Below are positions 3,791 to 39,359 of a DNA stretch of 64,000 bases, piece after piece; within the stretch, counting starts at the first letter, position 1; each line of letters starts with the position of its first letter. Under the pieces are notes generated by a model that saw only the letters and a list, made by a program, of their open reading frames with translations, was not told the origin of the DNA and ran no database searches. The stretch covers positions 1 to 64,000 of the forward strand of contig NW_021833274.1 of assembly GCF_006345805.1 (NCBI RefSeq), read 5' to 3'. The translations under genes and the position numbers were made by a program. The DNA comes from Octopus sinensis (Eukaryota).

Positions 3791-3926
3791 TTTACAAGCA
3801 TTCGTCTTTTTAACTCCTTCTGACACTTAAACACAATCTATCTGAGGTAATCTAGGTGCTTATTTTATTTAACCCAATTCCCCCTGAAATTGGGAGGAAT
3901 GCAGGACAGACCTCTTAGGGTCACAC

Positions 3927-4021
3927 CATAAGTTAAGGAGCTCTAATTCCTCGGCCACTTTTCTTTTGGACCTATTGTATTAAATAAACCATATTCATTC
4001 ATTCATTCATAAGTTAAGGAG
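3927..4021 (+). mobile_element. 67-bp 5'-truncated LINE insertion with (ATTC)n tail and 14-bp TSD
   Basis: CATAAGTTAAGGAG at 3927-3940 and 4008-4021 flanks an insert ending AATAAACCATATTCATTCATTCATT. Confidence 0.8.
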
Positions 4022-4039
4022 GGAGTTAATCTTATATGA

Positions 4040-4340
4040 TCTTCTTATAGCGCTTTTTGCAATCCAGGAGGACGTGCGTTACTGTGTATCCTCCGTCATG
4101 GCAAATTAGGCAGTACGGATCAACATCCTTATCCAGTTTGTTTTGATAGTCAAAGAGTAAAGGATGATGGTCACAGTGAAATCTAGCGAGTTCGACCCGA
4201 TTATTGTGACTGAAATCTTTTTCAGCTGAGTTTATTTTTTAGGGGGGATAGTTGAGGATATTGTATTCGGTTAATACATTCAATAATGATTTTGTTATTA
4301 ATTCTTTTATTTCCGATGGTTTTTTATTAGAGAATAAAGT
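4040..4340 (-). mobile_element. LINE ORF2 C-terminal CCHC-domain fragment (related fragment at about 16560-16800, minus)
   Basis: ILNYPPKKINSAEKDF...RVELARF...DPYCLICHDGGYTVTHVLLDC; the homolog reads ILNNPPSKINTAEKDL. Confidence 0.6.
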
Positions 4341-4819
4341 TAGGATACGTTGCCAGTGCCTGTCAGGAATTCGAAAAAAAGAGCCAACCTCTCCTACCTG
4401 AATCACTGCAAATAAACATACTTATTTAAGTTTTTGAAGTTTTTTTGTAGTTTATTTTTGACACAAATAGAAATAAAAATTTCCCCAAAAACTAATTTTT
4501 AGTTTTTAGTCAGCAAATTTAAAGCATCGAATACCGTCGTTAGATTTGTTTCCGCCTATCCCAATCACTTTGCCTAAGTTCTCAGCCCCTAGCAGCAGTG
4601 GTGGAATAGACGACTTAAAGCCAATGCATCTTCGTGATCTCTTGTCTTCATTGACCCACGATTCGCTATCTTTCATCATTCGTCTTTGCATGTTGTGTCG
4701 AGACTAATTTCAACCGTCGCTAGAAAGTTTTTTTTTTCTGCAGGGTTTATTGCTTTGATAAACGTGTGGGGCCTAGTAAGTAACGTCTTTAGGAGATTCA
4801 GCCAAAATAATGTCATATA

Positions 4820-7608
4820 CAGTGCTCGTCAAAAAAAATTGCTCAGCCATTTTTTCATGCTTTTATTGACAAATTAATAAAAAATTTAATCTTACGCTTC
4901 ATTTTTTATTCTAATTTTTAAGTATATTAATTTATTTATGCGATTTTATTTCAATATAAGGAATTTAAAGCATAAAAATTTAAATCTCGTGACAAAAAAC
5001 ATTGCTCACTTTTCGTGTTACAGTCCGACCCCAAAATGGGGCAGACCCCAGGGGTGGGGCACCCTCGGATTTTGGGGCACCCCCGCAATTTGGGGCACTT
5101 TATTCCAAAAGTACATTTTGGCAGAAAAAAAATAAAAATCGATAAAAAATTATGGAATTTTTGGGGCACCATAAAATCATTTATAAGGAATTAAAAATAA
5201 AATAAAATTATAATAAATTAATTATTTTTTGTTTTATTTTCAATTTATATTTTTATTGTTGTGGTTATGGATTACGAAACTAAATTGAAGATTGCTAAAG
5301 AAATTTTGAAGAAAAATTTATCTGAGAGGCAACTAATGAAAAAGTACAACACAAGTAAAGGAACAATATCAAGAATAAAACGAAATATTGTACCTTTCTT
5401 GCAACACGGCAATACTATTTCTGAGGAATATGACACATTTAAAGCCGATAAAGATAAATTTGATGATCAAGTCTTTGAAATATTTCAAAGACTACGCGTA
5501 GATAAAATTCCGATTTCAGGCCCTATTTTGAAAAAAATTGCCTTAGTTACAGCTTCAAAAATTGGATTTACTTCTTTTAAAGCTTCCAATGGGTGGCTTG
5601 ATAGATTTAAATTGCGGCATGAACTTCAATTCAAGTCAATATGTGGTGAAAAAGCTTCATGTGATTTATCTTATGTGAAAAATTATTTTGAAAAATATGA
5701 CCAGAAAGTATTAAAATATTTTGCCGAAAAATACAACGCCCTATTTACAACCTTTGGATATGGGAATAATCAAGATTTTTAAAGATTATTATTCCTCTTT
5801 CTTAATGGAATTTTTATGTTTTCAAGATTTCGAAAACGATTTTACACATTCTATTGGTAAATTAAATTTGCGTCAGGTTATGATGCTAATTTCAAAAGGA
5901 TGGGAGAAAATAGATGCTAAAAGTATTGTTAATTGTTGGAAGAAAATCGACAGGAACCGTGATTCTTATGCAACAAAAAACTGTCTAACAGATGAACATT
6001 TAGATCAAGTTGTTAACGAAACAATTGATGGAGAATGCGAAGACATGAACAATAATGTTTATGATACATATTCAGAAACCGAAAATAGTGAAAATGTCGT
6101 AGCAAAAACAAAAGATCTGCTTAACAATTTAGAAGAAAAAATTTCTAATGTTGCACCAAGTATGCTCCGAGATTTTTTTGATTTTCGGCTGAAATTGACG
6201 AACAATATCAGACAAAACTCTACAAATAAAAAGAAAATAACTGAATATTTTAGTAAAAATGTTTTTTGATGTTTATTAATGGTTTAATTTTTAAAAAAAT
6301 AACAAACCCCTGTTTTTGGGGCACCCCCGCATTTTGGGGCACTTGGTGCCCCATTTGGGGGTCGGACTGTATTGCATATGCCACGTTCTCCCAAGAAACA
6401 GTTAACTGAATTTAAAAAAGGCATGATTATTGCGTACTTTAAAGAGGGTAAATCAATCAGAGAAATCTCAAAAATACTTAATTTGCCGTATTCCACAATT
6501 TCATTTAATATCCAAAAATTTCGAGAATTTGGAACACTGCATCGGAGACCGGGCTCAGGACGTCTTCCGAAACTAAGTTCCCCCCAAATACAATTTTTAT
6601 GTAACGAAACCGATTCACATCCTACATTGTTGGCAGTGGATTTGTCCAACAAAACTAAAGAAACTTTCAATATTGATGTTTCCCCTAGGACAATTCTGAG
6701 AACTTTGAATAAAAATGGGGTATATTGTCGTGTAGCAAAAAGAAAGCGATTGCTTTCTCAAAAAATATTATTTCGAGATGGTCTGCGTCACTACGATTTT
6801 TATCGATATCTGATAGTACATGGAAATCGGTGATATTCTCAGATGAGTCAATGTTCGATATTTTTAACAACAGAAAACATCAGGTTGTTTACAGAAAAAA
6901 TAAAACGGAGTTAACAAATGCACATTTGCTGCCGACTGTTAAGTTCGGAGTAGGGAGAGTTATGATTTGGGGCTGTATATCGTATAGTGGTGTAGGCAAT
7001 TTGATTTTTATCGAAGAAACTATGAACTCTGGATATTATATAAATTTACTGTCTAATAATCTGGACTAATCAGCTGAAAAAATGGGCTTATCCTCGTTTA
7101 TTTTTCAACAGGATAATGCTCCATGCCATACATCTCGTATGGTTAAGGCATATTTCGAAACCAAAAAATATATTATTCTTGATTGGCCATCGCAATCACC
7201 GGATCTTAACCCAATAGAGCATATATGGTGCTTTATGAAAAGAGAATTAGCTAAAAATCCTCCGAAAAGTAAAGAGGATCTAAAGACAAATATTATGAAA
7301 ATTTGGCAGTCAATTCCTAAAAGTTTTTTACAAAACTTAGTAAATTCAATGAGAAAAAAGAGTTATTCTTTATTTTTAGCAAGGGGAGGACATATTAATT
7401 ACTGATAATGAGATTTCCAAATTTGTGCTAATGTTTTTTGTCTTGCAATTTTTTGTTTTGTTTAAGTTTGTAAATAAAAAAAAATGTTATTACAAAAATT
7501 AAGGTACAATAATAAAATACTACTTAAAGATGTTTACAAAAAAATAAATCAGAATAATGCTATATAAAGACATAAACATTGGTGAGCAATTTTTTTTGAC
7601 GACCACTG
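4820..7608 (+). mobile_element. Tc1-family (DD34E) transposon with IR/DR-type ends, interrupted by a pogo element; copy 2 at 52744-55532
   Basis: TA-CAGTGCTCGTCAAAAAAAATTGCTCA ... TGAGCAATTTTTTTTGACGACCACTG-TA, with inner repeats at about 4990-5010 and 7420-7445. Transposase 6378-7405 has DESMF, QQDNAP and SPDLNPIE (D34E), one frameshift and one nonsense codon. Confidence 0.93.
5021..6369 (+). mobile_element. pogo/Tigger-like element, internally deleted, nested in the Tc1; copy 2 at 52945-54293
   Basis: TIRs CAGTCCGACCCCAAAATGGGGCA with TA TSD. CENP-B-type HTHs (FKASNGWLDRFKLRH) are joined to the distal DDE_1 part (PKNTTPYLQPLDMGII); most of the catalytic core is missing. Confidence 0.92.
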
Positions 7609-7629
7609 TAAGATGGTTTTGGCTTTGAG

Positions 7630-7990
7630 TTTAGAGTTCTTCCCTTTTCATTATGGCGTCTGTTTTAAAAATGCAGACAAAAATCTTGTGGACGGCACTC
7701 GCCAACTTGCCAACTCAAAACCCAAAAATTCAAGTTTATTGTTATGGTAGACGTTACTAATGCTTTCAATTGTGTTCGACAAAACCATTTGCTCGAAATA
7801 ATCTCTATACGATGCCCAGAGCTCTTACCATTTGTAAAATTAACGTATTCCTCCACAAGTCGTTTTTGATTTATGACCAAATTATCATGTCTGAATGCGA
7901 AGTGACCCACTGGACCCATTGCTGTTTGCCAATTCTGTTGACCATATTGCACACAACATTTGCAGCGATCTATAGTTATTTTGAACTCGT
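7630..7990 (+). mobile_element. CRE-clade reverse transcriptase fragment; copy 2 at +47924
   Basis: PFHYGV...VDVTNAFNCVRQNHLLE...CPELLPFVKLTYS...DPLDPLLFA, frameshifted. Confidence 0.65.
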
Positions 7991-8207
7991 CAATTTCCGA
8001 CCATAGCATAGTAAAAAATTTTTCTTTCACTCTCAAGCCAGGCAGTCTTCCCGGAATGACAATTTCATTTTTTTCAATACTCTTAAACTTAAATCTCTTT
8101 TTTGAAAACTATATTTTGAAATTAAATGATAGGTAAATTAAAAAAGTTGAAAGTAGATTCACACCAATGAAGTCCTTAGTTGACGAATATTCAGTGGGAA
8201 TCGGTAG

Positions 8208-8550
8208 ACAACGGATGTTCTTGAAAGCCACCCCGTCGTTTTGACTGTAAAAGATTTGGGGGCAATTAGACATTTTTTGAGGACAACTATGACGGAGAAG
8301 GATGATGCGACTAAGCGTCAATTAATGCAGGGAATTTTAGAAATCAATCCAAAGTATGACGAATTTTATTATTGAAAGACATCCGATTGTCGTCAGACTA
8401 CATGCGGTAAAGGATAGTGACAAGGAATTGGCAGTCATGTTGGTTAATCAGTTATACGAAAATGCACTAGCTAATGCTGGTTTGTGCGAAGATCCAAAAT
8501 TGTTGGTTCAAAAAATTAATCTTTTGGTTGCTAAATTATTGGAAAAATAA
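8208..8550 (+). pseudogene. TRAP1: C-terminal fragment of mitochondrial HSP90 (TRAP1); copy 2 at 56132-56474
   Basis: LESHPVVLTVKDLGAIRHFLR...QLMQGILEINPK|HPIVVRLH...LVNQLYENALANAGLCEDPKLLVQKINLLVAKLLEK*, with a 25-nt GT-AG intron at 8354-8378. No upstream exons recognisable. Confidence 0.85.
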
Positions 8551-8619
8551 TAATTTTGACTCGTTAATAGTCGTTGATTTCATGTTTTGTTGTTCGAAAA
8601 GATTTATAATTAGAATAAA

Positions 8620-9560
8620 AAATGAAACTTTCCATAATTTTAGTTTTGTTAATGGGATCGGTATTCGGTAGAATTCTTTGAAAAATTATTTAAGATAATG
8701 CCAGAAGTGATTGTTTGATTCGCTGCTAGGTGATATCCATCTTTTTATATATTGGTTAAATGATTGAAATTAAATACTTCCTAAGTACTTTTTGACTTTA
8801 CCTTATACCGAATGACCTCGGTCGATCAAAAAATACTTGATTTTGGATAGTTCACACACTTCATTTAAATATGAGTTTTTAAACTCTGTTCCATTGTTAG
8901 TGTGCTATGTAATTGCCGCCACAATTAAAAAGAAAATCTCCTTTAAGATATTGGAAATTTCAATTGCAGATTTTAATTTGGCAGTCTCAACCACACCAAA
9001 TTTAGAGAAAGAGTCAATAAGTAAGACAATCTTCTATAAATATACACGAAGCCAGACCCATGAGAACGAATTGTTTATTTCCGAGTATGTTCGTAAATCC
9101 ACGAGATGGATATTATATCTGACCTGCTGCGCATAAGCAATTAATGTCTGTGTGTTTGAGAGGTTTAGATGGCATTAACCGTTTAGAATACGAATTAAAT
9201 TACCTAATTTACCTGAAAAAACGCACTGTCCGATAACTTTACAAATTTCTAGTCTTTCTATTCCATATATTTTGAATGATAATAAAGTAAGAAGTATATC
9301 TGTACGAAAATGGTTAGAATTGTACTCAGGCTTAAAATTCTAACCAATACGTTTACCTAAATAGTTTTCATCTTCAATTCAGCTTCATCAGTAGGAAATC
9401 TAAAAGTTTCCCTTTTTCAAAAATAAAAAGTTGAAATATCTTTAAAAAAAACTTTTGATACAAACAGCTCTTTTTGCCAAAGACATGACTAATCTAAAAC
9501 GAAATCTGAAAAATGGTGATGATTTGGATTGCAAAGAACCGTGAATTTAGATGAAAATAG
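8620..9560 (-). mobile_element. Degenerate Ginger-type integrase with micro-introns; copy 2 at +47924
   Basis: HLVDLRTYSEINNSFSW|KIVLLIDSFSKF...HTNNGTEF...FNQYIKRWIS; colinear with the 13896-14832 integrase, with shared intron positions and stop codons. Confidence 0.75.
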
Positions 9561-10539
9561 CGAAATTCATTTTTATCAGTTCGAGTTAATTCATGGCGCA
9601 TGGTCGTTGTCACCTTCTTCTCGTGAAATGAATCTGCATTTATTTTCCGCAAGCCTCATACACATCAACTTCAGTAGTAATAAATGACCTCAGCCTCTAC
9701 TCTTGGCCTCAAACATGCTCTCAATTTTGGCCATTGAAATTCTCACATCAGATGCCATGTCCAACTGGCATCCTTCTAAATATGGTTTTGGCCACATTCA
9801 CTATTTCTCAACTCAATGAGACTTTTCACAGTTAGGGTTCATAAGAATTGTATTATTAAATTCATTTAAAACCAGCATGATTCTTCCACGCACATTTAAA
9901 AACTCAAATTATATATTTATTTATATTATGGAGTTTAGCCTATTAAATGGTAAACCTAAAACATTCACATTGCTTAATTAACTGCGTCAACGAGTCGCAT
10001 GTGTTTTTATTGCAAATATTAATTTTTTATTTATAATTATTTCAATTCAAGGACTTTATGCATATTAATATTTGCTCAGAACCTTCTATGAATTAAAAAA
10101 TTGTTGGTTATGAGTTTGTTTTTCCCAATATTGTGATATGCATTATTTCTTTGTTTAATGAATTCTTTTTAATGACCTAATTCTAAATCCTAATTCTCAA
10201 ATCGATTCTTGATTTGACCTGTTTATAATTTTATTTTTCAGACAATTTAGTAATTTATTTTTAATGTTTTTGAGTGCTATTACTCTAACAACATTTCTTA
10301 ATGATTATTAATGTCTTTTATACTTTTATTGTATGCCGAATTCTTATTTTATTAAATATAACAATTTCTATTATTGGATTTCCTTTTATTTATTTTTTGG
10401 TTGGCTTATCAGTGCTAAGTACAAATAGAGTGATATCGCAGGATAACGCAAGATAAGGCACGATTGTTGTAACTCATATCGTCTTTCCCGTATTATCAAC
10501 GAACTATCTTTTGATTTAAATCCATTGTAAGAAAACTAA

Positions 10540-10950
10540 CTCACCATATGCTTCCTCGGTGATTAATGTTGCCATTTGAGTTTTATCTTTATATATTTTT
10601 CACGTTTTTCAAGAGAGAAAATTTGAAACCCAGCAAAATACAAACAGCGTAGAATTTTGACAATCGGAATGTTACTGTGGATATCATAGATTCTAAGTTT
10701 CCAAATTCAAGATATTCAAAGACCATGAACAAAAAATTCTGATTTTTTTAATATATTAGAACCATTGAGTAAAAATGTGAATGAAGATGCGACAAAAATT
10801 TGTTATGTGACTTTTTCGCTATGGAAAAAATGTAAATCTCGTTTTTTAGCTTCATTCATTGTAATTCGGTGTTTTTCCTGCTCTTCATTCTTGATGGCAT
10901 ATAATTTCTCATCTTTTTTGTATTTATGGAAAGATACCTAAATAAATTAT
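10540..10950 (-). pseudogene. AGC-group Ser/Thr kinase fragment (PKC/PKN-like); copy 2 at about 58461-58871
   Basis: KKDEKLYAIK (subdomain II), LFMVFEYLEFGNL (subdomain V), KFYAVCILLG (subdomain VIa); disrupted. Confidence 0.55.
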
Positions 10951-11003
10951 TATTGTATGTATTTCATACATTTCCGAAGTTTCTCTGCATTTAATCTAAC
11001 ATA

Positions 11004-12238
11004 CAGTGGGCCCAAAAAGTCATGGCACCACTTAATAAATTTTAGTATTTTACGTTTTTACCCATAAAATATGAAGTATTTTGACTTTTAATTATTTTTT
11101 TTGTTTGGGATCGTTGTCGTGTTGAAACGTCCAATTGCTTCTTAGCTTTAATTTATTGATGGACGGAACTAAACAATTTTCCAAAATTTCGACGTACATC
11201 TTGGCATTCAATATTCCATCTATGAAAAATAGTTCACCCACTCCTTGAGACAAAAAACACGCCCAAGACCACGCTAAAAACCGAACAAACGTCACGTGAT
11301 CCCGATGCACTCAACCAGGGACCTCATCCTCGCTCGGTGATCTTTCCACGAGCCCACACAAGATCGCACTGGGCGGCAGGCCGTTTTTGGCGGAGTGTTA
11401 TATTCCTTACTGAACTTTTCGGAATATTGAATTGTCTGGAAATTTGGTTGTAACTTTTTTTTCTTGGTGGGACTTGACGATCATCTGTTTTAGCTCAAAA
11501 GAATATTCCTTCCGATTTCCCATAAAGTAGTGTTAAAAACGGCTGTTTTCGTAATATCAATATTGATAATGCGTTATTAAGTGATAACAAAGCTTTTGTG
11601 AAGAAAACTTAAAAGAAATAATCTGACAGAATGACATTTTCTTATCATATGCACTTAAACTAAAACTGTAGATATAAAAGTGCCAACACTTTTTGACTCT
11701 TCAATAACGCTAAAAATTAAAAAAAGTTGTTTTTTCTTTGTCAATTATCAATGTTTTAAGGATTTAAAATTATTTTCTAAATCAGAATCTTTTTAATTTT
11801 TCAAAAAAAATAATTTATTTAAAAGGTCAATTCCAGAAAAATGTTAACTAAGGTCAATAAGAAGAACTGATGGCGATCCTGTTTCCCCTCACTATTGCTT
11901 GGGACACGTTCTGGAGGAGCCATCTCGTCTCCAGAGGATTGTGTGTTCTCAAGGTCTTGAGACGTCCAATACACTTGAGGAAGCACAACGACTTCTTCCC
12001 AGGGTTTCGACAGCACCTTGATTCCACCATCTGTCAATGGGCAGCCTAATATCTCCAGACTGATACTAGACGTGATGGACGGTCCGGGAATTATCTCACT
12101 GAAAGAGGAAACAATAACCTCGAATTCATCACGACGGAATTAAAAGTCAAAAAAATAATTAAAAGTCAAAATACTTCATATTTTATGGGTAAAATACTAA
12201 AATTTATTAAGTGGTCTCATGACTTTTTGGGCCCACTG
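11004..12238 (-). mobile_element. Tc1-like non-autonomous element with about 90-bp TIRs, containing a CRE fragment; copy 2 at 58925-60159
   Basis: TA-CAGTGGGCCCAAAAAGTCATG ... CATGACTTTTTGGGCCCACTG-TA. Transposase remnant WACFLSQGVGELFFIDGILNAKMYVEILEN...FQHDNDPK. Confidence 0.88.
11830..12135 (-). mobile_element. Internally deleted CRE fragment inside the Tc1-like element
   Basis: SLEILGCPL (RT thumb-region motif) followed within about 150 nt by ETRWLLQNVSQAIVRGN (RLE C-terminus). Confidence 0.6.
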
Positions 12239-13019
12239 TAGTAAAAATCATTTTTTAATATTGATACTTATGGTTTTGTTTTAAGAATTACGATTTAGAA
12301 ATAAGCTAGGTATTTTTTATAAATTGTGGCTAGAGCTTTCTATAAATTGTGGTTTTTTATAAATTGTGGCTAGACTAGATTTCAACTGGATTTAATTAAA
12401 AATAGAATATGACTAAAATCGGTGCATTCTGTTTATTTTGAATTTAAAAATGTTAAATTTATTTATTGTGTCAATAAATTTTTTTCAAAATGAATGTAGT
12501 TATTTGCTGTTTCTATAAAAAAAATTAAGAACCAATTAACTACACAATTAGCTAAACATTTCCTATCAAAGATTTTATAAAACATTTCCTATCAGTCAAT
12601 CTTCAAAAATATAGAAATTCAAAATCATAAAAATTCATGAAATAATAAAATTTATCTCAAAGAAAAGAACCTTTGTCCTTACAAATGACTTTAGCTGGCT
12701 TTTTGATCAAAAACACTTACCTACAAACCATTGCTCTTTTATGATAAAATTCAAGAACACAGCTCTGCGTAATTTCATTACAATTAAAAAAAAAAATTTC
12801 GAAAAACTTTATGATCGAATTCGCAAACACAGCAGGTGAATATAGTCAAACCCATCTAAATTGATTCCTTCCAGGATCCATAGAATTGTCCGGTATAGAG
12901 GGGATGCCTGTATATTGAAAAAGTTATTAAATTTACTTAAAACGAAAAAATGAAACAGTATAATTGATAGATATCTGTCTATAAGAATTTCCTCAAAATT
13001 TAGCTTTGATTCAATATGT

Positions 13020-13437
13020 GTTAAGAGAGTCGATTGTGGGGCAGATGAGTGCCATTTCTGCGGTATCCTCAAGTTTTTCTTTCCGTTGATGTGGTAGCTA
13101 TAAGACAGAATCAGAATGGTTGGGTAGACCGAGGCCACATACTCGTTTTTCTTTTTTCTGGGCTCTTCGGGGATCGGAAAGACAGAATTGACCAAATCTA
13201 TGGCAAAATACCTGTACGGAGACAAGAAAGCCTTCATTCGAATGAACATGTCTGAATTCCAGCATCAAAACGAAATGGCCAAGTTCATAGGGTCTCCTCG
13301 CGGGTACGTAGGTCACGAGGAGGGAGGACAGTTGACGAATCTACTAAAGGAGTCTCCTGATTCCGTCGTCCTCTTTGACGAAATAAAAAAGCCTCATCCT
13401 GACGTTCTGACTATAATGCTCCAATTATTCGACAAAG
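13020..13437 (+). pseudogene. CLPB: Metazoan mitochondrial CLPB/Skd3 AAA+ domain fragment; copy 2 at 60941-61358
   Basis: IVGQMSAISAVSS|TIRQxQNGW, LVFLF(+1)[11 protein letters not shown] (Walker A), [41 protein letters not shown] (Walker B). 25-nt intron; truncated by a pogo remnant. Confidence 0.88.
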
Positions 13438-13738
13438 TGAGTGTGTGGGGAATATTCGATAACTTCGGAATAATGTGGCATGGACAGTTGTCCATAATTA
13501 TAAATATTTTTCTCCCACAGCATTTTATTTGATTATCCAACCCCTTTATCCAATTTTGAAATATCATTGATGTCATCCATGATTTGGTATTAAATCTGTA
13601 ATCAGAATATAAATGATAATTGAAGCATTTGAAACAACGCGGATTATTAGATTTTCCAATCACAAGGGACGGTGTTTTTTGGTCCCATCTGAATTAAAAC
13701 TTGAAAAAATTGTAATTCTTTCTTCCTGTAATATTTCA

Positions 13739-15199
13739 TGTGACAGTCCGAATAAAATACACGCCGAATAATCTACACTTGTCACAAATGGCTGAAAAAA
13801 TTAGAAATCTAAAAATTAGTATGAACAAAATCAATAATTGATTATTTATTTTAGTAGAATCACATTATTATTTTTTATTTAAAAAAGCGTGAAACATGCG
13901 TGTAGTGAGATTATTTAAGGAAACACTGGACAAAATCAAAGAAATGAAAGACTCCAACTTTGATACATCGTCAATCGAGCGGCATGAGCGATACAGGCTC
14001 ACAAAATTGGGAAAGAATTTCCATTTTGAAAATGGAAAAACATATTTTCGAAAAAATGGGCTTAAATTGCGTTTTTTCTGTGAAGATGAAATCGAATTAA
14101 AGCTTAAGTGCGTTGAGGTCCAACTTAATAAATAAAATTTAGGCGGAACATAACTATAACCACTTTGGGAGAGACCGGCTTTTTTCGAAATTAAGAAATC
14201 TCTATTATGGATTGAATAGAGAAGAAATCTCTAAGGTGATTTCGAATTGTGCTTTCTGTCAGGTAATAACTCCTTTTAGTAAATATTCTTAGTCGAAAAA
14301 ATTATTGTCTACGAAGCCTCCGATTACGCCAATCATTGCAAGGAGATGTAGGGACAGATACATTGCGGATTTAATTGACCTCAGAAGATATTCGGCGTTG
14401 AATGATGGCTTTAGCTGGGTATGAATTTAATGTTAATAAATAGATTTTGGTAATTGTGGATTCTTTTTCCAAATATGTAATGCTTGAACTGTCGGTGACC
14501 AAATCTTCTGAAGAAATCGCAGATTTATTCCAAAGAATTTTTTATTATGTCGGGCCTCCGCTTATTCTACACACTGATAATGGAAGGGAATTTTGCAATT
14601 CGCAAATGGATGCTCTATGTACGAAATATGGTATAAAACATGTACGTGGGAGGCCTCGTGCTCCTTGGGTACAAGGGCAAGTCGAAAGGTTAATGATTTA
14701 AAATCGATTTGTAGATTTAATCAAAGCATAAAACGCTGGATATCGTCGGCAAGTTCTTCTCAAAATTGTTTTGGACGATATCGCGAATGCATAAAGGACA
14801 TCGTGTATGATTACAATAACAGCAAGAAATGATCTCTATGTTATCGAAAAGGAGGACGGTGAGCGGTTACACGGAATTCATATTTCTCGATTAGCTAAAA
14901 TTGATTAATTTTCATAAATCCATAATAAAAATAATTTTTTATTTAAATTAACGATAAATTTTATATGAAAATTTTATTAGGATAACCTAAAATGGAATAA
15001 CAATATTCAAACGTATAAGTTAACTGCGTAAATTGAGTGTGGTTGGTTTTGTTTATATAAATTAGTAAAAAAGGTTAATGAATTTTACATTAAAAATCAT
15101 ATTTTTAATAATAATTAAACATTTTGTTGTGTAAATTTTTAATTTCAGTAAAATTAAAGAATGTAATTATTCGGCGTGTATTTTATTCGGACTGTGACA
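13739..15199 (+). mobile_element. Ginger (Ginger2/Tdd-like) DNA transposon with intron-containing integrase; copy 2 at 61660-63120
   Basis: 34-bp TIRs TGTGACAGTCCGAATAAAATACACGCCGAATAAT, TGT...ACA ends and 5-bp TSD TTTCA. Confidence 0.92.
13896..14832 (+). CDS. Ginger integrase: spliced 276-aa open frame with HHCC zinc finger and DDE core; C-terminal part deleted or frameshifted
   Basis: Introns 14118-14142, 14263-14292, 14419-14443 and 14689-14714. Motifs EHNYNH...CAFC, YIADLID, LHTDNGREF, QGQVERFN. Confidence 0.85.
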
Positions 15200-15949
15200 T
15201 TTCATCATTCAAAACAATATTTTTAGACCTTTTGTTTACAAACCAAATCCAAAGAGCTCCCTCCAGATCCAAATTCTTCACAGATTTAGTGCGCTTAGCT
15301 TTTGAGTTATAATCATCCAAGTTTTATCTGTGTCGTAGTATTTCACAAACAGTCTTTCTTTGGACAGATAGTCTCCATATTTTTGAGAAGTGATCAGCAA
15401 TTTCCTAATGCGATTTATGTTTATTATTGTTATAATATTCAATTATTTCGTTTTTATGCTTAAAATTAAGAGATAGTCTTCTACAGCTTTCACTATTTAC
15501 CATTCTGCAATTTAAGTGCTAAAATCACGTAACCTATAACCGGTTAAAAACAATAATAAATTATTGTAATTCATATGACTTAAAAATAATAATTAAAAAA
15601 TTTGAATGGCGTTATATCAGATAAGGCAAATAATTTGGCGTGGCAATAACTGAGTGGCGGGGTTTAGCATTATAAAGAGAAATTCAAAAAAGAACAAAAA
15701 ATGACGCGGCAATAAGCGGGGTGGCATTATAAGGGGATGGCATTATAGAGGAGTTTAAGTTTATTTGAAAAATTGGATTTTAAAGGAGACGTATGTGGAA
15801 TAAAAAATTAGATTATCAAAAAGATGAATTCTAATGATATCAATAAAATAATGAATTTCGATGATCATCTCATTTCACGTTTGATTATTTTTTGTTAATT
15901 GTCAGACTATATCGTGCGCAGTGTAATGACTATTTTCGATACAAAATCT

Positions 15950-16510
15950 TAAACGAAGATAAGAATTTTAAAGTGGATAATGTAAAATAGTATTTAATTG
16001 CGAATAAACAATGGATAAAATCATAAAAAATTATCTACGCACGAGACAAGAAAAGTGTTCCGACTAGATAATCAAAAATTCGACTAGATTTATGAGTCAA
16101 TCATCGAACAAATACTTGATGTCATAAACGGAAAAACTATTTCAAGAGATTGGTTCTACACAGGGGTGACATATCTTATTTCGAAGTGTAAAAACCCGGT
16201 GTCCCCAAAAGAGTTACGGCCTATAACATGTATGCCGTTTCTTTATAAATTAATGACCAAATGTGTAAACACTAAGTTTGGAAAGTTTGTAGAAGTTTTC
16301 GGCCATCTTTCTGAAAATCAACTGGGAACAAGTAAGCTATGCCAGTGGAAAAAGAACAAGCATTCGTGAATAGAGTTAAACAAAGCGAATGCTTTTTTAG
16401 CGTGGATCGACGCTAAAAAAGCATTTGATTTAATAGATCACGATTTTCTGATACAGATTTCGGAAATTATGATCTATTTGGATGGATTGTCAAGCTTTTT
16501 GAGTCGATGG
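15950..16510 (+). mobile_element. Degenerate R4/Dong-like RT fragment
   Basis: WFYTGVTYLISK...LRPITCMPFLYKLMTKCVN...SENQLGT...WIDAKKAFD; homologous to 37107-39329. Confidence 0.8.
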
Positions 16511-18035
16511 TCACCAGATAAAAAGTCAAACTAGGGCTATATGGCAAGTACATCAGATGGAGAGTCATCGAACAAAGCTAAAAGAAATAGGGAGAACCTC
16601 ATTATAAATAGATCTTTTTCAGCTGTGTTTATTTTTGAAGGGGGATTGTTGAGGATATTGATTACAGTCAGTTCGTTCAAGGATGGCTTTTTTATTATTT
16701 CTTTCATTTTCAATGGCTTTTTGTCAGTGAATGAGTTTAAAATACGAGAAGTAATTTGCAGTCACGCTGCATGTTGTGTTTTTGTGATGTTCATTCTTCT
16801 ATTGAAACTTAATCAAATATAAGACCCACTTATCTGGTCAGCATGAGCGCTCTAATGGAGTCACCAGATCTGGATCCACAAAAAAATTCCACAATAATCT
16901 CCCCGGGTAACACGGATACGTTTATAGAATTCACTGGTGAAACCCATCCACATCTATAATGTCGGAACATGGGAATTTTCTGATACGGATAATTTTAATC
17001 TTCACTCGGGAAATACACCAAACTATTTAGTATATTTATTTCAAATATAATTCCACACTGAAAATAGACATAAGATATACATTTACTTACAAAAATTAAA
17101 GATAATTTTTTTGTCACATATAAAAAAGTAAACCCATAAATCACTTCAGCAAGAGCCGAAATACGAATGACGTTTGACATCACCTGAGCACAAAAAACGA
17201 ATTAACTTTCAGCAAGACTCAGCTCATTCACAGACAATCCAAAAGAGATGATAGACCCCCCAAAACAGGTATATTCTCACCAACAAATCCCAAACCAAAT
17301 TTGAAAAGTGTGTCTCTATCCTTTAGTAACTACAACCTGAGTACAATTAGTACAATTGGGAGTAGTTTATACTAATTGAAATTATCAAAATAACAGCATA
17401 GAAATGCTCTTTGTAATAAATACGGATGTTAGATATTATTTTTTAGACTAGACTTCATTCGGATGTATATGGAAGCCAAGAGTTTATCTTCTTAGATTTA
17501 ATCTTTGAGATCGGTAGGACTATGATTTTTTGTGAGGAATGCGACTGATTTGGAAATAGTGTTCATTAGTCTGCTCAGGTTTTGTTTTTGTAAAATCCAT
17601 TCATTTTCATTGATTTTTTAGGATTTTATAACTTTTCTGCATTTTCCATAAACGAGAAAGGGGAAATTTCTTTGTCACCCCTGTTTTAAGTTGTGTGAGT
17701 TTTCTTCCTTGTAGTCTTCTTCTAAGTTTAGTACTATATAAAATTTTATTTTTATCAAGAACTGATATATAGACCCTAGATATAAATGACCAGTCAACAA
17801 AATTTATTAGAGGATTTGATTATGATAGTTCTTTAGTTCATAATATTCCCTCAATGAGAGTAAACATAATATCCGAGGATCTCTCTACCAAAAATCCGTT
17901 TTTCAAATTAGTAAATCGCAGGATACCACATTGATTTTTTGCCAGAAGTACTCAAAGTAAACTTTATAAACAAATTTAGACTTTTTTGTTTCTATTTAAT
18001 AAAATTTTATTTTTTTAATTTTTGTACAAAATTAT

Positions 18036-18832
18036 TGTGACCGGTTTTATTTTGGACCAGGTTTTATTTTGGACCTCTGAAATCTTCGATGTAATTAAAT
18101 CATGTGTTGAGTGCCTTTTTGTTACTAATAAGAGAACATAACTTTAACTTAAATTAGGATTTTAGTGTTAGGGTTAAAATTTTGTTTAGGGTTAAGGTTA
18201 AAATGTTTAGCGTTAAGGAGAAAATGTTTAGGGTTAGGGTTAAAAATTTGTTTAGGGTTAAGGTTAAAATTTTTAGGGTTAGGGTTAAAATGTTTAGGGT
18301 TAAGGAGAAAATGTTTAGAGTTAGGGTTAAAATGTTTAGGGTTAAGGATAAAATGTTCAGGGTTAGGGTTGAAATTTTGTTAGTTGAGATTAAGATTTTT
18401 ATAATTAAAATTAAATTAAGTTTTTTATCGTTTGGACAACTATTAAAAATAGGGGTTTTAAAATTAAATTAAAAATTAGGGTGTTTTAGAATTAGGATTT
18501 TGGGTGTTAGGGCTATTATTAGAATGTATATGTGTTAGGGTTATATTTTTAAAATTTTTAATTAATAGAATTATATTTAGTTTTTAATTTTTTTAGAATG
18601 GAAGACCAATTTTTAAATAAATATCGTAACGGCAACGCTGTAATTATCAAATTTGTTGATTGGTTGGGTTGTGCATACTTCCATTTTTTAAAAAACTAAA
18701 TGAAATCAAGAAAAAACTATACAAAAGTATAATTTAACATTAACTAATATATTTTTAGTGGAATAAAATTTTTATTATTGATTTTTTTTCTCGGTCCAAA
18801 ATAAAACCTGGTCCAAAATAAAACCTGTGACA
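18036..18832 (+). mobile_element. Non-autonomous Ginger-type element (MITE-like) carrying a TTAGGG minisatellite
   Basis: About 40-bp TIRs TGT(G/C)AC(C/A)GGTTTTATTTTGGACCAGGTTTTATTTTGGACC with 5-bp TSD ATTAT (18031-18035 and 18833-18837). No coding capacity. Confidence 0.9.
18165..18375 (+). repeat. Telomere-like minisatellite, about 21-nt unit TTTAGGGTTA(G/A)GGTTAAAATG; degenerate TTAGG units continue to about 18545
   Basis: About ten units with roughly a dozen perfect TTAGGG hexamers. Confidence 0.92.
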
Positions 18833-19744
18833 ATTATTTTTTTAAATTAGAATAAGATATTTAATATATTTGGCCACAAAAAAGATCAGGATAAAACCTA
18901 TTTATTATAACGTTAATTACTCTGGACAATATCTTTGCTTAAAATCTTGATAAAAAATGTTGAAAAGATTATTCCCATATTTATTGTCTTTTTTTACCGA
19001 GGTCGGACTGCTCAGACTCCCAATTGTAGTTTCTTGGTCTATCAGTAATAGTTCGCATGAATTAACATTTATTTGATTTCTTTAAATGAACAAATGAAAA
19101 TGTGGTTTTTTTGTTCGCCATTTCCTTTTTTATTACTTTGTTTGTATAGATTGTTCTTTCATTGTCATTAAGTGAGATTAAGTCGACTATTAATGATAAT
19201 AAAATAAATATAAACTTATTTTGTTTGAGCAAATCACACGATTTCTAATTTTTTTCCACAAATACGCAACATTACTCTTTCCTTTATTCTATTTTACCCA
19301 TAAACTTACAGCAACCATTTAGTTTAATTATGATGTCGTTCTAAATATTTTTATTTTAAAATCACATGTCGTAATTTATATTTGAAATAATATAAATAAT
19401 TCAATATCGTACTAAAAAAGATTAAGTCGTAATTGTGTTTGTTGTTGTTTCTTATTAAAAGATTTATATTCAAATTTAAAAATATTTATCCTTAAAAATT
19501 TTTTTTACATATCTCTGAAGTCAGTGTTTTGTGGTATATATTTTTAGTCAATTATTATGGAAATTAACCATCTGAATATTCTCAGAGTAAATGCTTCAAT
19601 CAGGCATGAATTCAAAACACCGTGAGTAGAAGAAATATGACCAACTCTTATTTGAATTTCTTGCTAAATCTTGTTAAGAGAGTTAGCATGCAGGTATAAT
19701 GGAGATTAGCTAAAAAATACGCATATATTAAAAATTCTATTATT

Positions 19745-22250: not shown

Positions 22251-22647
22251 AAAATCAAAAATCAATTTTAGAAAAATAATTAATAACAGTTTTCATCAAA
22301 TTAAGTCAAAAATCTTAAAATTTTTTAGCACAGTATCTATTGAAATGATCTCAGGAATAAAATGCGTAAAAATGTTTCTTCTCCGACTCATCAACAGAAT
22401 CTTGCGTTTTTCTTCCAATTGTTTTGAAATCATCGTTTCCTTAATTTTTGTTATAAAAATTATGGAAAAATTTTCCAATTCACACATTTAATATTTTGTG
22501 TACGACATTTTTTATTGTAAATTAGTTAATCTTACTTTACTCAGATTACAGCAGAAGGCATAATACATCAGGTTTATTTGCGTGCATTTATGTCGGAGAA
22601 AAACCAGCAGGTTGAATATTGAAAATAGTGTTCAAAAAATAAGGAAT

Positions 22648-23901
22648 ATGGTCAAGGAAAAGAAAGAAAAAATGGCCAAGAATAATCAAAATCTCTCATC
22701 AATCAAAGCTTGCTCCAAAGTTCAAAAACGAACAGCGGCAAAGCCACAGCCCTTTTGCGAACCCATCAAAGCTGAAGATCCCACAGAACTGCCGAAGTCT
22801 ACTGGGCCTCAAAAACAGAGTGAGACCCAATCCCATCAGACGAAAACTGAGCCTAACACCTCAAGCCTCACATATTCCCTGAGTATCGAAAACTCGACAC
22901 TTGGAAAGATCAAGAGGTTTAACCTCCTATCCAACTCGCCAACTGCCTCCAAAGCCCGGATAACTTTACAGAAGTCCGGCACCTTCATTCTAAAATTCAG
23001 ATCGCCCGAGGATGCTGCTGCTTTCAAAGCAGAGCTGTCTCAATCAAATATGTTTGGGGAAGGCGGCCATAAACTTGCCTCAGTAGCTGAGAAGGCCTCA
23101 GTCTTGGTCCTTAAAGGAATCCCTCATTGGATCTCGACAGAGGATCTTAACCTCCACTTGAGAGAAAGTCTAGAATCGGACTTCAAGTTCGAAAGATTCT
23201 CTCGCAATGGAACCGACATACCTGTCGGCAGACTCACGCTGGATTCCAGAGCCGAGGCCAACACCCTCATCCGCTTTGGAATAACTGCGGGCTTCAGCCA
23301 TATCCGCTGCGAATGGCACAAGCCGTCAGCAACGAGATGCTTCTGTTGCAATCAGTTTGGACATACGTCCTACAGATGCTCCGAAAAACTCCGTTGTCTC
23401 CTCTGTGGTAAAGAACACAGGCACCAAAACTGCCCGAGTTCCAAGCCCAAACCGAGTGTCCCAGCTGCAAAAACTTGCATTAACTGCAAGAACACTGGGC
23501 ACTTGGCGTGCTACGGTGGATGTCCGTCTGCCAAAGCAGCAACAGCAGCCTTAAGGGTTTCGAAGAGCCCACAGACTAAAAGCCCAGTACGCTGGGTAAA
23601 AGCCGAACGGATGGAATCAGTCTGGACAAAAGGGTCTCCCCAAAGTCCGTCGAAAGTCGATGTCTCTATTCAGACGTCGCCGGCCCTCAGGTCTCAAACA
23701 AGCTCGAAGTCAAACACTAATGAGTCCCATAACTCAGAAGTGGTCCGCTCGGCTCCCCCCCATAAGAAGGGAGAGGACCTACACAACAGAGATTCCCTAT
23801 TGGAATCCTTCTGCCGTTGGGTAGACACCCTGACCAAGGCTGGAGTAAGTTTGAATATGGTGCAAGAGCTCCTGCTAGAAAGGAGCAATTCACCAACATA
23901 G
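22648..23901 (+). CDS. LINE ORF1, gag-like nucleic-acid-binding protein
   Basis: Open frame with three zinc knuckles: CFCCNQFGHTSYRC, CLLCGKEHRHQNC, CINCKNTGHLACYGGC. Start codon uncertain (22648 or 22672). Confidence 0.88.
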   Translation: MVKEKKEKMAKNNQNLSSIKACSKVQKRTAAKPQPFCEPIKAEDPTELPKSTGPQKQSETQSHQTKTEPNTSSLTYSLSIENSTLGKIKRFNLLSNSPTASKARITLQKSGTFILKFRSPEDAAAFKAELSQSNMFGEGGHKLASVAEKASVLVLKGIPHWISTEDLNLHLRESLESDFKFERFSRNGTDIPVGRLTLDSRAEANTLIRFGITAGFSHIRCEWHKPSATRCFCCNQFGHTSYRCSEKLRCLLCGKEHRHQNCPSSKPKPSVPAAKTCINCKNTGHLACYGGCPSAKAATAALRVSKSPQTKSPVRWVKAERMESVWTKGSPQSPSKVDVSIQTSPALRSQTSSKSNTNESHNSEVVRSAPPHKKGEDLHNRDSLLESFCRWVDTLTKAGVSLNMVQELLLERSNSPT

Positions 23902-26495
23902 CCACGATCAAAATAATCGTTGTGAATGCCCGTTCTATCAAGAGACGGCATCACGACTTCGTTGAGATGGTGAACAGCGGCCATCCAGACATTATTGTCG
24001 TCAACAAGTCGAAGCTCAAGGAAGATGACTCGTACCAGCTCCCAGGCTACCGGTCAGTGGATCTTAAATGGGGTAGCTGCTCTACGCCTGGGACTGGTTC
24101 GAGCATCTTTTACAGCGAAAATCTCAAAGTCTGTAACCTCACTATCATCGAGGGGACACTGTGTGAATTCCTCTTCCTTGAGGTGAAAACAGAGTCTTTC
24201 TGGCTAAAGATCGGTGGAATATACTGCAAATATCTTCCTCCCTGCACCAGTCTGATTAACGATTTCTTCTCAAATACCGCTCACTGCCTTCTTATTGGAG
24301 ACCTAAACTCGAAGCATACGGCGTTTGGATGTCGATTAAGCAACCAGGATGGTCGAACACTGAAGAAGATCACTGACAAACTTGGTGTTTTCGTCAGGAC
24401 ATCTGAAGTGCCGAACCACTAATCGCCCTACGGCGAGGACAACCTATGCCTGTCCATCTGTTCTCACTCGATCGCTACCATTATGGAAAAGCCTACAGTG
24501 CTTGACGATATCGGAAGTGATCACCTTCCTATGGAGATCAAAATTCACTCTAGCTCTATTAAAGAAGAAGACGTATCCACAGGCTACAGTCTTTCAAGAA
24601 TCAACTGGCCACACTATAGAAGCTCCATGAGTGCCTTTCTACTTGTGAACACTCACCTTACATACTACAACACTGCCAGCGACATCGACTATGCAAGCGA
24701 TGAGCTAACAAATTTCATGCGCCATTATCTAAAATCGTACGGAACAGTGCCATGTGCTGACCGCCTACGAAGATCTACTCTAAGCACGAAGGTGAAACTT
24801 CTTCTCAACGAGAGAAAGCGGCTGAGAAACAAACTCAAGCGCTGTGTTGACCCCACTGACAGGGGTAGACTTAAAGACATGATCTCGAAAATTGGCTATG
24901 AAGTTCAAGTCGTGACAAAGCTGGAAACTGCCAGGAAATGGCAGAAGGCTTGTCAAAACTTAGACTACAGAAACCCAAATTTCTGGGACTGTTTCCGCAA
25001 AGTGGCTAACCTCGAAGGAAAATCCTCACCCCCGAGGCTGTGCAACCAATTTGGTATGCCCGTCTCGCCACAGGAAATCCCGAAAATTTTCGCAGAACAC
25101 CTGGCCATTATCCAGGAAGCCAATCCAATAACGCCGCAAGGCAGGGAGTCGGAGCCACTGCCGCGCGCACTGTCGTCGGAACATCACCCGATCATCACTG
25201 CAGAGGTGACCTGGGCCATCCGTTCGTCAAAAGGCAACGCACCAGGCCACGACAAAATACCGATGCGGCTGTTTAAGGAAGCCTCTGAAGACCTACATGT
25301 GTTCCTTGCGGATCTGTTTACGGCAAGTCTCAAGTGGGGCCATGTGCCGGGAAAATGGAAAATCTCAGAGGTCCGGATGATCAAAAAGCCTGCGAAGCCT
25401 GTGAACCTCGCTAGCAGCTATCGTCCCATAAGCCTAATCCCAACTATCTCAAGGCTGATGAAAAAAATCATGGCCAAGCGCCTTGACTTCCACTCAGAAG
25501 AAAAGAGAGTGCTGCTAACGCAGCAATGGGGTTTTCGTTCTGGGCGTAGCTGCAGTGACTGTTTCATAACGGTACAGTCCATGATTTCGAGAGCAATGGA
25601 ATTTAAAGAAACTCTATCTCTTGTATGTCTGGACATTTCAAAAGCTTTCGACACCGTCTGGCACAGAGACCTACTGGAAAGGATCCAACTCTGTGTGCCT
25701 ACAGCGGAAGTCTACCTCTGGCTGCGCTGCTTTCTCTCCGAACGATACTCGTTTATTTCCGAATCTGGTTTCCGCTCAAGAGATATTTCACTCCGAAGAG
25801 GGGTTCCGCAGGGGTCCTGCCTCAGTCCACTTCTTTTCAATTTGGTTATGAGCAGTTTCCCTTTGCCCCAGGACCCTCTGACAAATCTACTTCTCTATGC
25901 TGATGACGTCCTTATCCTTGACACCTCAAAAGATGTGATGGCCTCAGAAAAGAGGCTTTTCACCTACATTGAGGTAATAAAGGAGTGGTGCGCCAGCAAA
26001 CAGCTCTCGTTAGCAATGGATAAATCCGCTTTCCTACAAATCAACTCGAAAAAGTCATCAGATCAGAGCTCTGGGCCCCTAGCCGAAATTGGACGCCCCA
26101 GCTGCATACGCTACCTGGGGCTTACGATCGACGCTAACTCAGGCTACCGTCTGCATGTAAAGAAAAAGAGAGCGAAAGCCATTGCGGCTCTCCGCCTCTT
26201 AAGAAGCATGCATCTGGATCCTAAGACATTCCTCTTTGTGTTCCATGCAACCATCCTACCCAGCTTGCTGTACGGAATGGAAGCATGGTACTACTCGAAA
26301 GATCTCGAGAAAATTTACGGGAAATGCGAGAAAATCCGACGCTACGCGCTGAAGCTAGCTTATAGGCTTGACCCACGAGGCCCCGTCCCAAGCTGGGCGG
26401 AGACCAGATCCCTGGAGATACGACAGGTCATTGAGAAATCTATCCGGTCTTTCCGGAGGAGATCCCAAGTGACCGACCTGTTTATCGACCGGTAA
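23817..26495 (+). pseudogene. LINE ORF2, APE endonuclease plus reverse transcriptase, one in-frame TAA at 24420-24422
   Basis: VNARSI, LIGDLNSKH, DIGSDHLP (APE); SYRPISL, DISKAFDTVWH, GVPQGSCLSPLLF, LYADD (RT). The two ORF-track pieces are in the same frame. No RNase H seen. Confidence 0.92.
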
Positions 26496-39350: not shown

Positions 39351-39359
39351 AACTTTACT

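What the first reader, a model, noticed from the sequence alone, without database searches (positions are those of the whole stretch)
18036..18832. DNA transposon carrying a telomere-like TTAGGG array
Seen: a discrete 797-bp unit with TGT...ACA TIRs, doubled 17-bp subterminal repeats and a perfect 5-bp TSD (ATTAT), enclosing about ten 21-nt units that each hold one or two TTAGGG hexamers on one strand. It shares an end asymmetry with the Ginger at 13739 (left TGTGAC, right end reverse-complement TGTCAC) and the same TSD length. Established: TTAGGG is the common metazoan telomere repeat, and interstitial copies can bind telomere proteins, form G-quadruplexes and seed breakage or healing. Inference: a Ginger-mobilised element that spreads interstitial telomeric sequence and could recruit telomere-binding proteins or act as a fragile or telomere-addition site. 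I do not know whether this family has been described.
Basis: partly seen in the sequence, partly recalled or inferred. Interest (0 to 1): 0.72.

Follow-up and report, generated by a model that had tools for sequence, protein, structure and literature searches.

The report
Ginger-type MITE with TTAGGG-bearing minisatellite
This is a small, non-coding cut-and-paste transposon of the Ginger/TDD kind whose middle is a 21-base tandem repeat that contains the telomere hexamer; it is a tidy example of a known kind of element, and nothing here shows a telomere-related role.

Summary
It is 797 bp and has 40-nt terminal inverted repeats (38/40). Each repeat is TGT[G/C]AC[C/A] followed by two perfect 16-nt units. 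The element is flanked by ATTAT on both sides and has no real ORF. Ten 21-24-nt units lie at 18159-18381.

The neighbouring element at 13739-15199 is a true Ginger-type transposon, with H2C2 zinc finger and rve integrase remnants, TGTGACA ends and a 5-bp TSD. Both elements share the same end layout: a heptamer followed by two tandem 16-17-nt units. The unit sequences are unrelated, so they belong to the same superfamily but to different families.

The array is a degenerate minisatellite, not a telomere tract. Exact TTAGGG covers 30% of it, there are never more than two hexamers in a row, and no G-quadruplex is predicted.

I found no second copy in the window or in any collection I could search. 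The source genome and its close relatives are absent from those collections. Copy number, spread and the host telomere motif therefore remain untested.

Verdict: a non-autonomous Ginger2/TDD-like element with a passenger minisatellite. It is a new member of a known kind, and the telomere-function ideas are unsupported speculation.

The parts
18031..18035 (.). Left target-site duplication ATTAT
   Evidence: It matches 18833-18837. The direct repeat can be extended to AATTATT by overlapping the element's terminal bases.
18036..18075 (+). Left TIR: heptamer TGTGACC (18036-42), then unit GGTTTTATTTTGGACC at 18043-58 and again at 18060-75
   Evidence: I1, D16; 38/40 to the right end.
18076..18158 (+). 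Left unique, non-coding spacer
   Evidence: no meaningful ORF.
18159..18381 (+). Minisatellite of ten 21-24-nt units, TGTTTAGGGTTA[A/G]GG[TT/AG]AAAA, with 42/66-nt higher order and all G-rich strands on +
   Evidence: mean pairwise unit identity 88%, 11 exact TTAGGG.
18382..18550 (+). Decayed, AT-rich continuation with scattered TTAGGG (18476, 18507, 18535) and a 28-nt x2 repeat (18442-18494)
18551..18792 (+). Right AT-rich subterminal region, weakly similar to the right subterminal region of the Ginger at 13739-15199
   Evidence: The local score of 37 exceeds all 1500 random window segments (maximum 36). This is a hint only.
18793..18832 (-). Right TIR: two units (18793-808, 18810-825) and heptamer TGTGACA on + (TGTCACA as read from the end)
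18833..18837 (.). Right target-site duplication ATTAT
13739..15199 (+). Context: degenerate Ginger-type transposon. It has a 34/35 TIR, TSD TTTCA (13734-38 and 15200-04), and H2C2 zinc finger and rve integrase core in broken frames. A duplicate copy lies at 61660-63120.
   Evidence: rve E=3.2e-15; Integrase_H2C2 E=2.4e-5.

Best explanation
The unit is a non-autonomous cut-and-paste DNA transposon (MITE-sized, 797 bp) of the Ginger2/TDD type.

**How it moves (inferred).** An integrase-like DDE transposase supplied in trans recognises the TGTNR termini and the two 16-nt subterminal sites at each end. It excises the element and reinserts it with a 5-bp staggered cut, which produced the ATTAT duplication. 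The supplier would be an autonomous Ginger family whose ends carry GGTTTTATTTTGGACC units. The family at 13739 does not carry them.

**The central part (inferred).** About 400 bp in the centre is passenger DNA. A 21-nt minisatellite grew by slippage or unequal exchange from a seed holding a short telomere-like stretch (TTAGGGTTAGGG). That seed may have been filler laid down at a double-strand break or captured subtelomere-like sequence. The array has since partly decayed.

**Shown versus inferred.** Shown: the anatomy, the TSD, the lack of coding capacity, the Ginger-type end architecture and the degenerate nature of the array. Inferred: trans-mobilisation, the origin of the array and its lack of function.
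For: - **Element structure.** TIR 38/40 with a 33-nt perfect core, and a perfect 5-bp TSD. Inverted repeats of this kind are about 40 times rarer in simulated sequence.
- **No coding capacity.** The only ORFs are repeat-derived, at most 96 aa.
- **Termini.** TGTGA/TGTCA fit the TGTNR rule of Ginger elements, and a 5-bp TSD is reported for TDD-4/-5 (PMC2836005).
- **Neighbouring element.** An integrase-bearing TIR element 2.8 kb away has the same heptamer, the same position-4 G/C asymmetry, the same TSD length and the same heptamer + unit + unit layout.
- **Orientation.** The only significant subterminal similarity is right end to right end, which agrees with the orientation given by the heptamers.
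- **Precedent.** Ginger2-derived MITEs of 531-651 bp with TGTTACGG... ends are already described (PMC3845634). Tandem-repeat-containing MITEs are a known class (PMC3879986, PMC4079207).
- **Array.** It is degenerate and no G4 is predicted.
Against: - Only one copy could be found, so mobility and family status rest on structure alone.
- No autonomous partner with matching subterminal units is in the window.
- Metazoan Ginger2 elements are reported with 4-bp TSDs in RTATAY/TATA targets (PMC2836005, PMC3845634). The two TSDs here, ATTAT and TTTCA, are 5 bp and do not fit that target.
- The TSD length is formally ambiguous (5-7 bp).
- A 12-nt exact telomere dimer occurring twice, with all hexamers on one strand, is unlikely by pure chance. 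A functional or telomerase-related origin of the array is therefore not excluded.
Confidence: 0.68

Rival explanations
1. It is a solo LTR of a Gypsy-like retrotransposon. LTRs begin TGT and end ACA, are a few hundred bp long and are flanked by 4-6-bp TSDs. Recombination between two LTRs would leave this single unit.
For: TG...CA termini, a 5-bp TSD, 797 bp and no ORF. The literature notes that Ginger termini mimic LTR termini (PMC2836005, PMC6839031).
Against: - The terminal inverted repeat is 40 nt, built from two tandem units at each end. LTR terminal inversions are usually only a few to about 20 nt; this figure is my own knowledge.
- The same end layout occurs on the neighbouring element, where 35-nt TIRs directly enclose an integrase gene in 1.46 kb. 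That cannot be an LTR element.
- No LTR-element interior with these ends is in the window.
Confidence: 0.1
2. This is the reader's functional reading: a transposon family that disseminates interstitial telomeric sequence. The array would bind double-strand telomere-repeat (Myb/TRF-type) proteins, form G-quadruplexes, or act as a fragile or telomere-healing site.
For: - 12 AGGGTTA cores and 14 TTAGGG, all on one strand, spaced at 21 bp, which is about two helical turns.
- Enrichment is strong relative to the window: 14 in 0.8 kb against 13 on both strands in 63 kb.
Against: - There are never more than two hexamers in tandem, and exact hexamers cover 30% of the array.
- No G3N1-7 or G3N1-12 motif is present, and no G4 appears in the ViennaRNA fold, while a (TTAGGG)4 control does fold into one.
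- No other copy was found, so spread is undemonstrated.
- The host telomere motif is unknown.
Confidence: 0.07
3. It is a non-autonomous member of a different or undescribed DNA-transposon superfamily with a 5-7-bp TSD, and the resemblance to Ginger ends is convergent.
For: - The TSD can be read as 5, 6 or 7 bp.
- Beyond the first 8-9 nt the TIR sequence is unrelated to the Ginger at 13739.
- The 5-bp TSD and the target do not match published metazoan Ginger2 (PMC2836005).
Against: - The 9-mer TGTSACMGK occurs only at the ends of these two elements, at their duplicates, and at one unrelated site in 64 kb.
- The end architecture and the TSD length are identical to an element that does encode an rve integrase.
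Confidence: 0.1
4. It is not a mobile element at all but a local inverted duplication that happens to bracket a minisatellite.
For: It is a single copy in all data that could be searched.
Against: It has sharp boundaries, a perfect flanking 5-bp direct repeat, canonical TGT...ACA termini and four identical 16-nt units arranged symmetrically.
Confidence: 0.03

Closest known systems
Ginger2_NA MITEs of Bombyx mori and Rhodnius prolixus (PMC3845634)
   Same: Non-coding derivatives of Ginger2 transposons of 531-651 bp. Their ends begin TGTTACGG..., compared with TGTGACCGG/TGTCACAGG here. They insert into AT-rich targets.
   Different: They have a 4-bp TSD (TATA-like) rather than 5 bp. The passages I read mention no internal minisatellite. 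The TIR sequences are otherwise unrelated.
TDD-4 / TDD-5 of Dictyostelium and the Ginger2 group (PMC2836005)
   Same: Cut-and-paste elements with TIRs, TGTNR termini and an integrase-like DDE transposase. TDD-4/-5 make 5-bp TSDs, as both elements here do.
   Different: Those are autonomous protist elements. The unit here is non-coding and sits in a metazoan-like genome, where published Ginger2 families make 4-bp TSDs in RTATAY targets.
Tandem-repeat-containing MITEs: DTC84/pearl of bivalves (PMC3879986) and Tetris of Drosophila virilis (PMC4079207)
   Same: They share the modular plan of a short terminal 'cassette' with inverted repeats enclosing a short array of tandem repeats that can vary in copy number and seed satellites.
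   Different: They belong to different superfamilies with different TSDs (for example AA for DTC84). Their repeat units are about 150 bp rather than 21 bp, and no telomere-like motif is reported.
Short interstitial telomeric sequences inserted at double-strand breaks (PMC8537989)
   Same: Telomere-type hexamers at an internal site. This is a plausible source of the seed TTAGGGTTAGGG.
   Different: True ITSs are head-to-tail (TTAGGG)n. Here the hexamers are embedded in a 21-nt unit with 9-15 nt of unrelated AT-rich spacer, and the tract lies inside a transposon.

Membership tests
Ginger2/TDD DNA transposons (non-autonomous member) | Terminal inverted repeats of tens of bp | tested here: met
   40-nt TIR, 38/40, with a 33-nt perfect core.
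Ginger2/TDD DNA transposons (non-autonomous member) | Termini follow TGTNR ... (TG...CA), as in PMC2836005 | tested here: met
   TGTGA at the left end and TGTCA at the right end read inward.
Ginger2/TDD DNA transposons (non-autonomous member) | 5-bp TSD (TDD-4/-5 type) | tested here: met
   ATTAT on both sides. The neighbouring Ginger has TTTCA on both sides. A 6-bp reading is formally possible for both.
Ginger2/TDD DNA transposons (non-autonomous member) | 4-bp TSD within an RTATAY/TATA target (published metazoan Ginger2) | tested here: not met
   No 4-bp parse keeps symmetric ends, and the targets AAATTATTTT and ATTTCATC lack RTATAY. Only two insertions were available.
Ginger2/TDD DNA transposons (non-autonomous member) | An autonomous partner with the same ends encoding an H2C2 + rve (DDE) integrase-like transposase | not testable with these tools
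   There is no partner in the window, and the source genome is absent from the searchable collections. The neighbouring element has H2C2 + rve but different subterminal units.
Ginger1 | 4-bp CCGG/CCGT TSD | tested here: not met
   The TSD is ATTAT.
GingerRoot | 6-bp GC-rich TSD and TA...TA termini (PMC6839031) | tested here: not met
   The termini are TG...CA and the TSD is AT-rich.
MITE | Small, non-coding, with TIRs and a TSD | tested here: met
   797 bp, only repeat-derived ORFs, TIR and TSD present.
MITE | Many homogeneous copies in the genome | not testable with these tools
   One copy in the 64-kb window. Zero hits in the viral, metagenome and prokaryote-genome collections.
Interstitial telomeric sequence | Head-to-tail array of the telomere hexamer | tested here: not met
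   At most two consecutive TTAGGG (18228 and 18273). Exact hexamers cover 30% of the array, and the unit consensus matches (TTAGGG)n at 15/21 positions.
Interstitial telomeric sequence | The motif equals the host's own telomere repeat | not testable with these tools
   The host could not be identified. The best protein identities are 27% for the LINE RT and 83% or less for the CLPB exon.
G-quadruplex-forming sequence | Four G3+ tracts with short loops | tested here: not met
   Zero G3N1-7 and zero G3N1-12 motifs. The loops between G3 runs are 3, 12, 15, 18, 24 and 39 nt. ViennaRNA with its G4 option predicts none, while a (TTAGGG)4 control is positive.
Solo LTR | TG...CA ends with a 4-6-bp TSD | tested here: met
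   This feature is shared with Ginger elements, so it does not discriminate between them.
Solo LTR | Matching full-length element with two direct LTRs and a gag-pol interior | not testable with these tools
   None in the window, and the genome is unavailable.

The most novel reading that the evidence does not exclude
A Ginger-type MITE family carries a phased array (21 bp, about two helical turns) of AGGGTTA/TTAGGG cores. By transposing, it seeds binding platforms for double-strand telomere-repeat proteins at internal sites. This would give the host dispersed sites for telomere-protein recruitment, chromosome healing or gene regulation.
Probability: 0.05. Interest if true: 0.65.

Novelty: new member of a known kind. 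Interest (0 to 1): 0.27.

Why it matters
If the family proves multicopy, three things follow:
- It adds a metazoan-like Ginger lineage with 5-bp TSDs and doubled subterminal sites.
- It is another case of a transposon acting as a cassette that carries and could spread a minisatellite.
- The shared layout of heptamer plus two units, with different unit sequences in two co-resident families, is a useful handle on how integrase-like transposases tell their own ends apart.

The telomere angle would matter only if the host uses TTAGGG and the cores are conserved across copies. Nothing here shows that.

Tried and rejected
**Searches for other copies**
- The doubled 16-mer TIR pattern gave no hit in viral contigs, metagenome contigs or genome contigs. 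The heptamer plus unit pattern gave none in viral contigs.
- The array 21-mer in metagenome contigs gave one hit. It is a single chance occurrence in a bacterial contig with no tandem array. The degenerate array pattern gave no hit in viral contigs.
- I used the 96-aa array-derived ORF as a protein proxy to find other arrays in assembled public reads. It found nothing.

**Attempts to identify the host, and so its telomere motif**
- An exact look-up of the LINE RT found nothing.
- The RT homologue search gave at best 27% identity, or 42% over one-third of the query.
- The CLPB exon search gave hits at 83% or less, mixing birds, a sea slug and unnamed assemblies.
- A contig look-up returned only an ENA sample code.
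- Rfam found no RNA genes in the window.
- The Skd3 paper did not say which animal lineages lack the gene.

**Other checks**
- The extra TGTGACCGG at 43949(-) has no subterminal units or partner and is a chance match.
- There are no paralogous copies of the flanks in the window, so no empty site could be shown.
- Homology between the MITE and the Ginger beyond the heptamer: three of four end pairings are at background. The right-to-right pairing is marginal, with a score of 37 against a null maximum of 36.
- The 16-nt units of the MITE and the Ginger are unrelated in the forward orientation and only 10-12/16 alike in reverse, so I did not treat them as homologous.

Full report
**1. What is there**

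The sequence at 18036-18832 is a sharply bounded 797-bp unit with 25.6% G+C.
- The left end reads TGTGACC, then GGTTTTATTTTGGACC, A, and GGTTTTATTTTGGACC again.
- The right end is the mirror image and finishes ...CCTGTGACA.
- The two ends align at 38 of 40 positions, differing only at positions 4 (G/C) and 7 (C/A).
- The 16-nt unit occurs in the 64-kb window only at these four places. The two 3-mismatch matches elsewhere are unrelated.
- ATTAT flanks both ends.
- The flanking direct repeat can be stretched to AATTATT by borrowing the element's first T and last A. The 5-bp TSD is therefore the reading that keeps symmetric TG...CA ends, not the only arithmetic possibility.
- The only ORFs are artefacts of the repeat, at most 96 aa.
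- Perfect 16-mer inverted pairs within 3 kb fall on 14 diagonals in the real window, against about 0.3 per Markov-simulated window. All the strong ones mark recognisable transposons. The structure is therefore not a chance palindrome.

**2. The array**

TRF finds 10.0 copies of a 21-nt period at 18161-18375 with 81% matches, plus 42- and 66-nt higher orders.
- Written out, the units are TGTTTAGGGTTA[A/G]GG[TT/AG]AAAA. Three of them are lengthened to 24 nt. Mean pairwise identity is 88%.
- The element holds 14 exact TTAGGG and 12 AGGGTTA, all on the + strand. The remaining 63 kb holds 9 on the + strand and 4 on the - strand.
- Exact TTAGGGTTAGGG occurs only twice, at 18228 and 18273.
- Exact hexamers cover 30% of the array, and the unit consensus matches a perfect telomere tract at 15/21 positions.
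- Downstream, to about 18550, lie decayed copies of the same motif.
- No run of four G3 tracts has loops of 12 nt or less. The loops are 3, 12, 15, 18, 24 and 39 nt.
- ViennaRNA with its quadruplex option predicts none, although it does for a (TTAGGG)4 control.

"Telomere-like" is a fair description of the motif. The tract itself is a minisatellite and not an interstitial telomere array.

**3. Relation to Ginger**

It spans 13739-15199.
- It has a 34/35 TIR and TTTCA on both sides.
- In three broken frames it carries an H2C2 integrase zinc finger (E = 2.4e-5) and an rve integrase core (E = 1.4e-15).
- A 1.46-kb unit in which 35-nt TIRs enclose an integrase is a degenerate Ginger-type DNA transposon and cannot be an LTR element.

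Both elements begin TGTGAC on the left and read TGTCAC from the right. The 9-mer TGTSACMGK marks only their ends, their duplicates and one unrelated site.

Both also share the same layout: a heptamer followed immediately by two tandem 16-17-nt units. In the Ginger these are GTCCGAATAAAATACAC and GCCGAATAATCTACAC.

The unit sequences of the two elements are unrelated. Beyond the heptamer, only the right-to-right subterminal pairing rises marginally above background, with a score of 37 against a maximum of 36 among 1500 random window segments.

My reading is that the two belong to the same superfamily with the same mode of end recognition, but to different families. The integrase family at 13739 is probably not the mobiliser of the 797-bp unit.

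**4. Comparison with the literature**

- Bao et al. (PMC2836005) define Ginger by TIRs, TGTNR termini and a Gypsy-integrase-like transposase.
  - Ginger1 makes CCGG/CCGT 4-bp TSDs.
  - Metazoan Ginger2 makes 4-bp TSDs in RTATAY targets.
  - TDD-4/-5 of Dictyostelium make 5-bp TSDs.
  - The two insertions here fit the termini and the TDD-type TSD length, but not the metazoan 4-bp/TATA rule.
- GingerRoot, with TA...TA ends and 6-bp GC-rich TSDs (PMC6839031), is excluded.
- Ginger2-derived MITEs of similar size, with ends TGTTACGG..., are already described in silkworm and Rhodnius (PMC3845634).
- MITEs that enclose short tandem arrays and can seed satellites are a known class: DTC84/pearl (PMC3879986) and Tetris (PMC4079207).
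- Short telomere-type insertions at repaired double-strand breaks are documented in vertebrates (PMC8537989). They offer a plausible, untested source for the seed of the array.

**5. What could not be tested**

No second copy exists in the window.
- Exact-pattern scans of the viral, metagenome and prokaryote-genome collections found nothing for the TIR.
- For the array they found one chance bacterial hit.
- A protein search with the array-derived ORF was empty.

The source genome and its close relatives are not in the protein collection. The window's LINE RT finds nothing above 27% identity over most of its length. A CLPB/Skd3-type exon at 13128-13430 finds nothing above 83%.

The host is therefore an AT-rich genome (about 31% G+C) of metazoan type, and I could not place it. 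Whether TTAGGG is its telomere repeat is unknown.
- whether other copies lack the array;
- whether the unit is unique in the genome;
- whether the true telomeres use a different motif.

**6. Mechanism and rivals**

- **Best explanation (0.68).** A non-autonomous Ginger2/TDD-type element moved in trans by an rve-type transposase. The transposase binds the heptamer and two subterminal sites at each end and integrates with a 5-bp stagger. The central minisatellite is passenger DNA.
- **Solo LTR (0.10).** It shares the TG...CA ends and the TSD. It is disfavoured by the 40-nt TIR built from units, and by the identical layout on an integrase-bearing TIR element.
- **Another superfamily (0.10).** See the rival entry for evidence.
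- **A non-mobile local inversion (0.03).**

**7. Verdict**

The transposon call and the Ginger affinity are supported and sharpened. The telomere-biology inferences are unsupported, and for G4 formation the in-silico evidence is contrary. This is a new member of a known kind and of modest interest. The most useful by-product is the shared end architecture with divergent unit sequences in two co-resident Ginger-type families.

Noticed in passing
window 1-16079 and 47915-64000: A direct duplication of at least 16 kb at 99.66% identity (37 mismatches, 12 gaps) with an offset of about 47.9 kb. It runs to the window's end, so its true length is unknown. If it continues, a second copy of the 797-bp element would lie about 2 kb beyond the window. 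It could be a tandem segmental duplication or uncollapsed haplotypes.
   Followed up: partly
window 13739-15199 (copy at 61660-63120): A degenerate Ginger-type DNA transposon with a 34/35 TIR, a 5-bp TSD (TTTCA), and H2C2 zinc finger and rve core in three broken frames. Its ends carry two tandem 16-17-nt units directly after the heptamer.
   Followed up: yes
window 11004-12238 (copy near 58925-60160): A 1.2-kb non-coding element with TIRs of roughly 100 nt beginning CAGTGGGCCC, flanked by TA. It looks like a Tc1/mariner-type non-autonomous element.
   Followed up: partly
window 13128-13430 (+) and 8341-8547 (+): Host-type exons. One is a CLPB/Skd3-like AAA_2 exon (E = 3e-30). It carries SPRGY and [11 protein letters not shown] where the eight homologues whose sequences I retrieved have SPPGY and DEV[D/E]KAHPDVL. 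The other is a weak HSP90/TRAP1-like C-terminal exon. This suggests either a fast-evolving host lineage or decaying gene copies. The Ginger and a pogo fragment (13394-13663, - strand) sit right beside the CLPB exon.
   Followed up: partly
window 22582-26495 (+) and 37107-39446 (-): Two non-LTR retrotransposon ORFs (RVT_1, E = 6e-35 and 1e-30) in islands of 40-48% G+C within a background of about 31% G+C. The best database relatives are only about 27% identical.
   Followed up: partly
window 5261-7402 (copy at 53185-55330): A patchwork of pogo-like (HTH_Tnp_Tc5, DDE_1) and Tc1-like (HTH_SB, DDE_3) transposase fragments. Short perfect inverted 16-mers lie at 4826 and 7587. An 81-nt inverted match (96%) links 4808-4888 and 35156-35236.
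   Followed up: no
window 347-596, 42627-42884, 48261-48510: A 250-nt dispersed repeat at 88-91% identity between the 347 and 42627 copies. The third copy belongs to the large duplication. It was not classified.
   Followed up: no
window 43949-43957 (-): A lone TGTGACCGG identical to the left 9-mer of the element, with no subterminal units or partner end. I judged it a chance match.
   Followed up: yes
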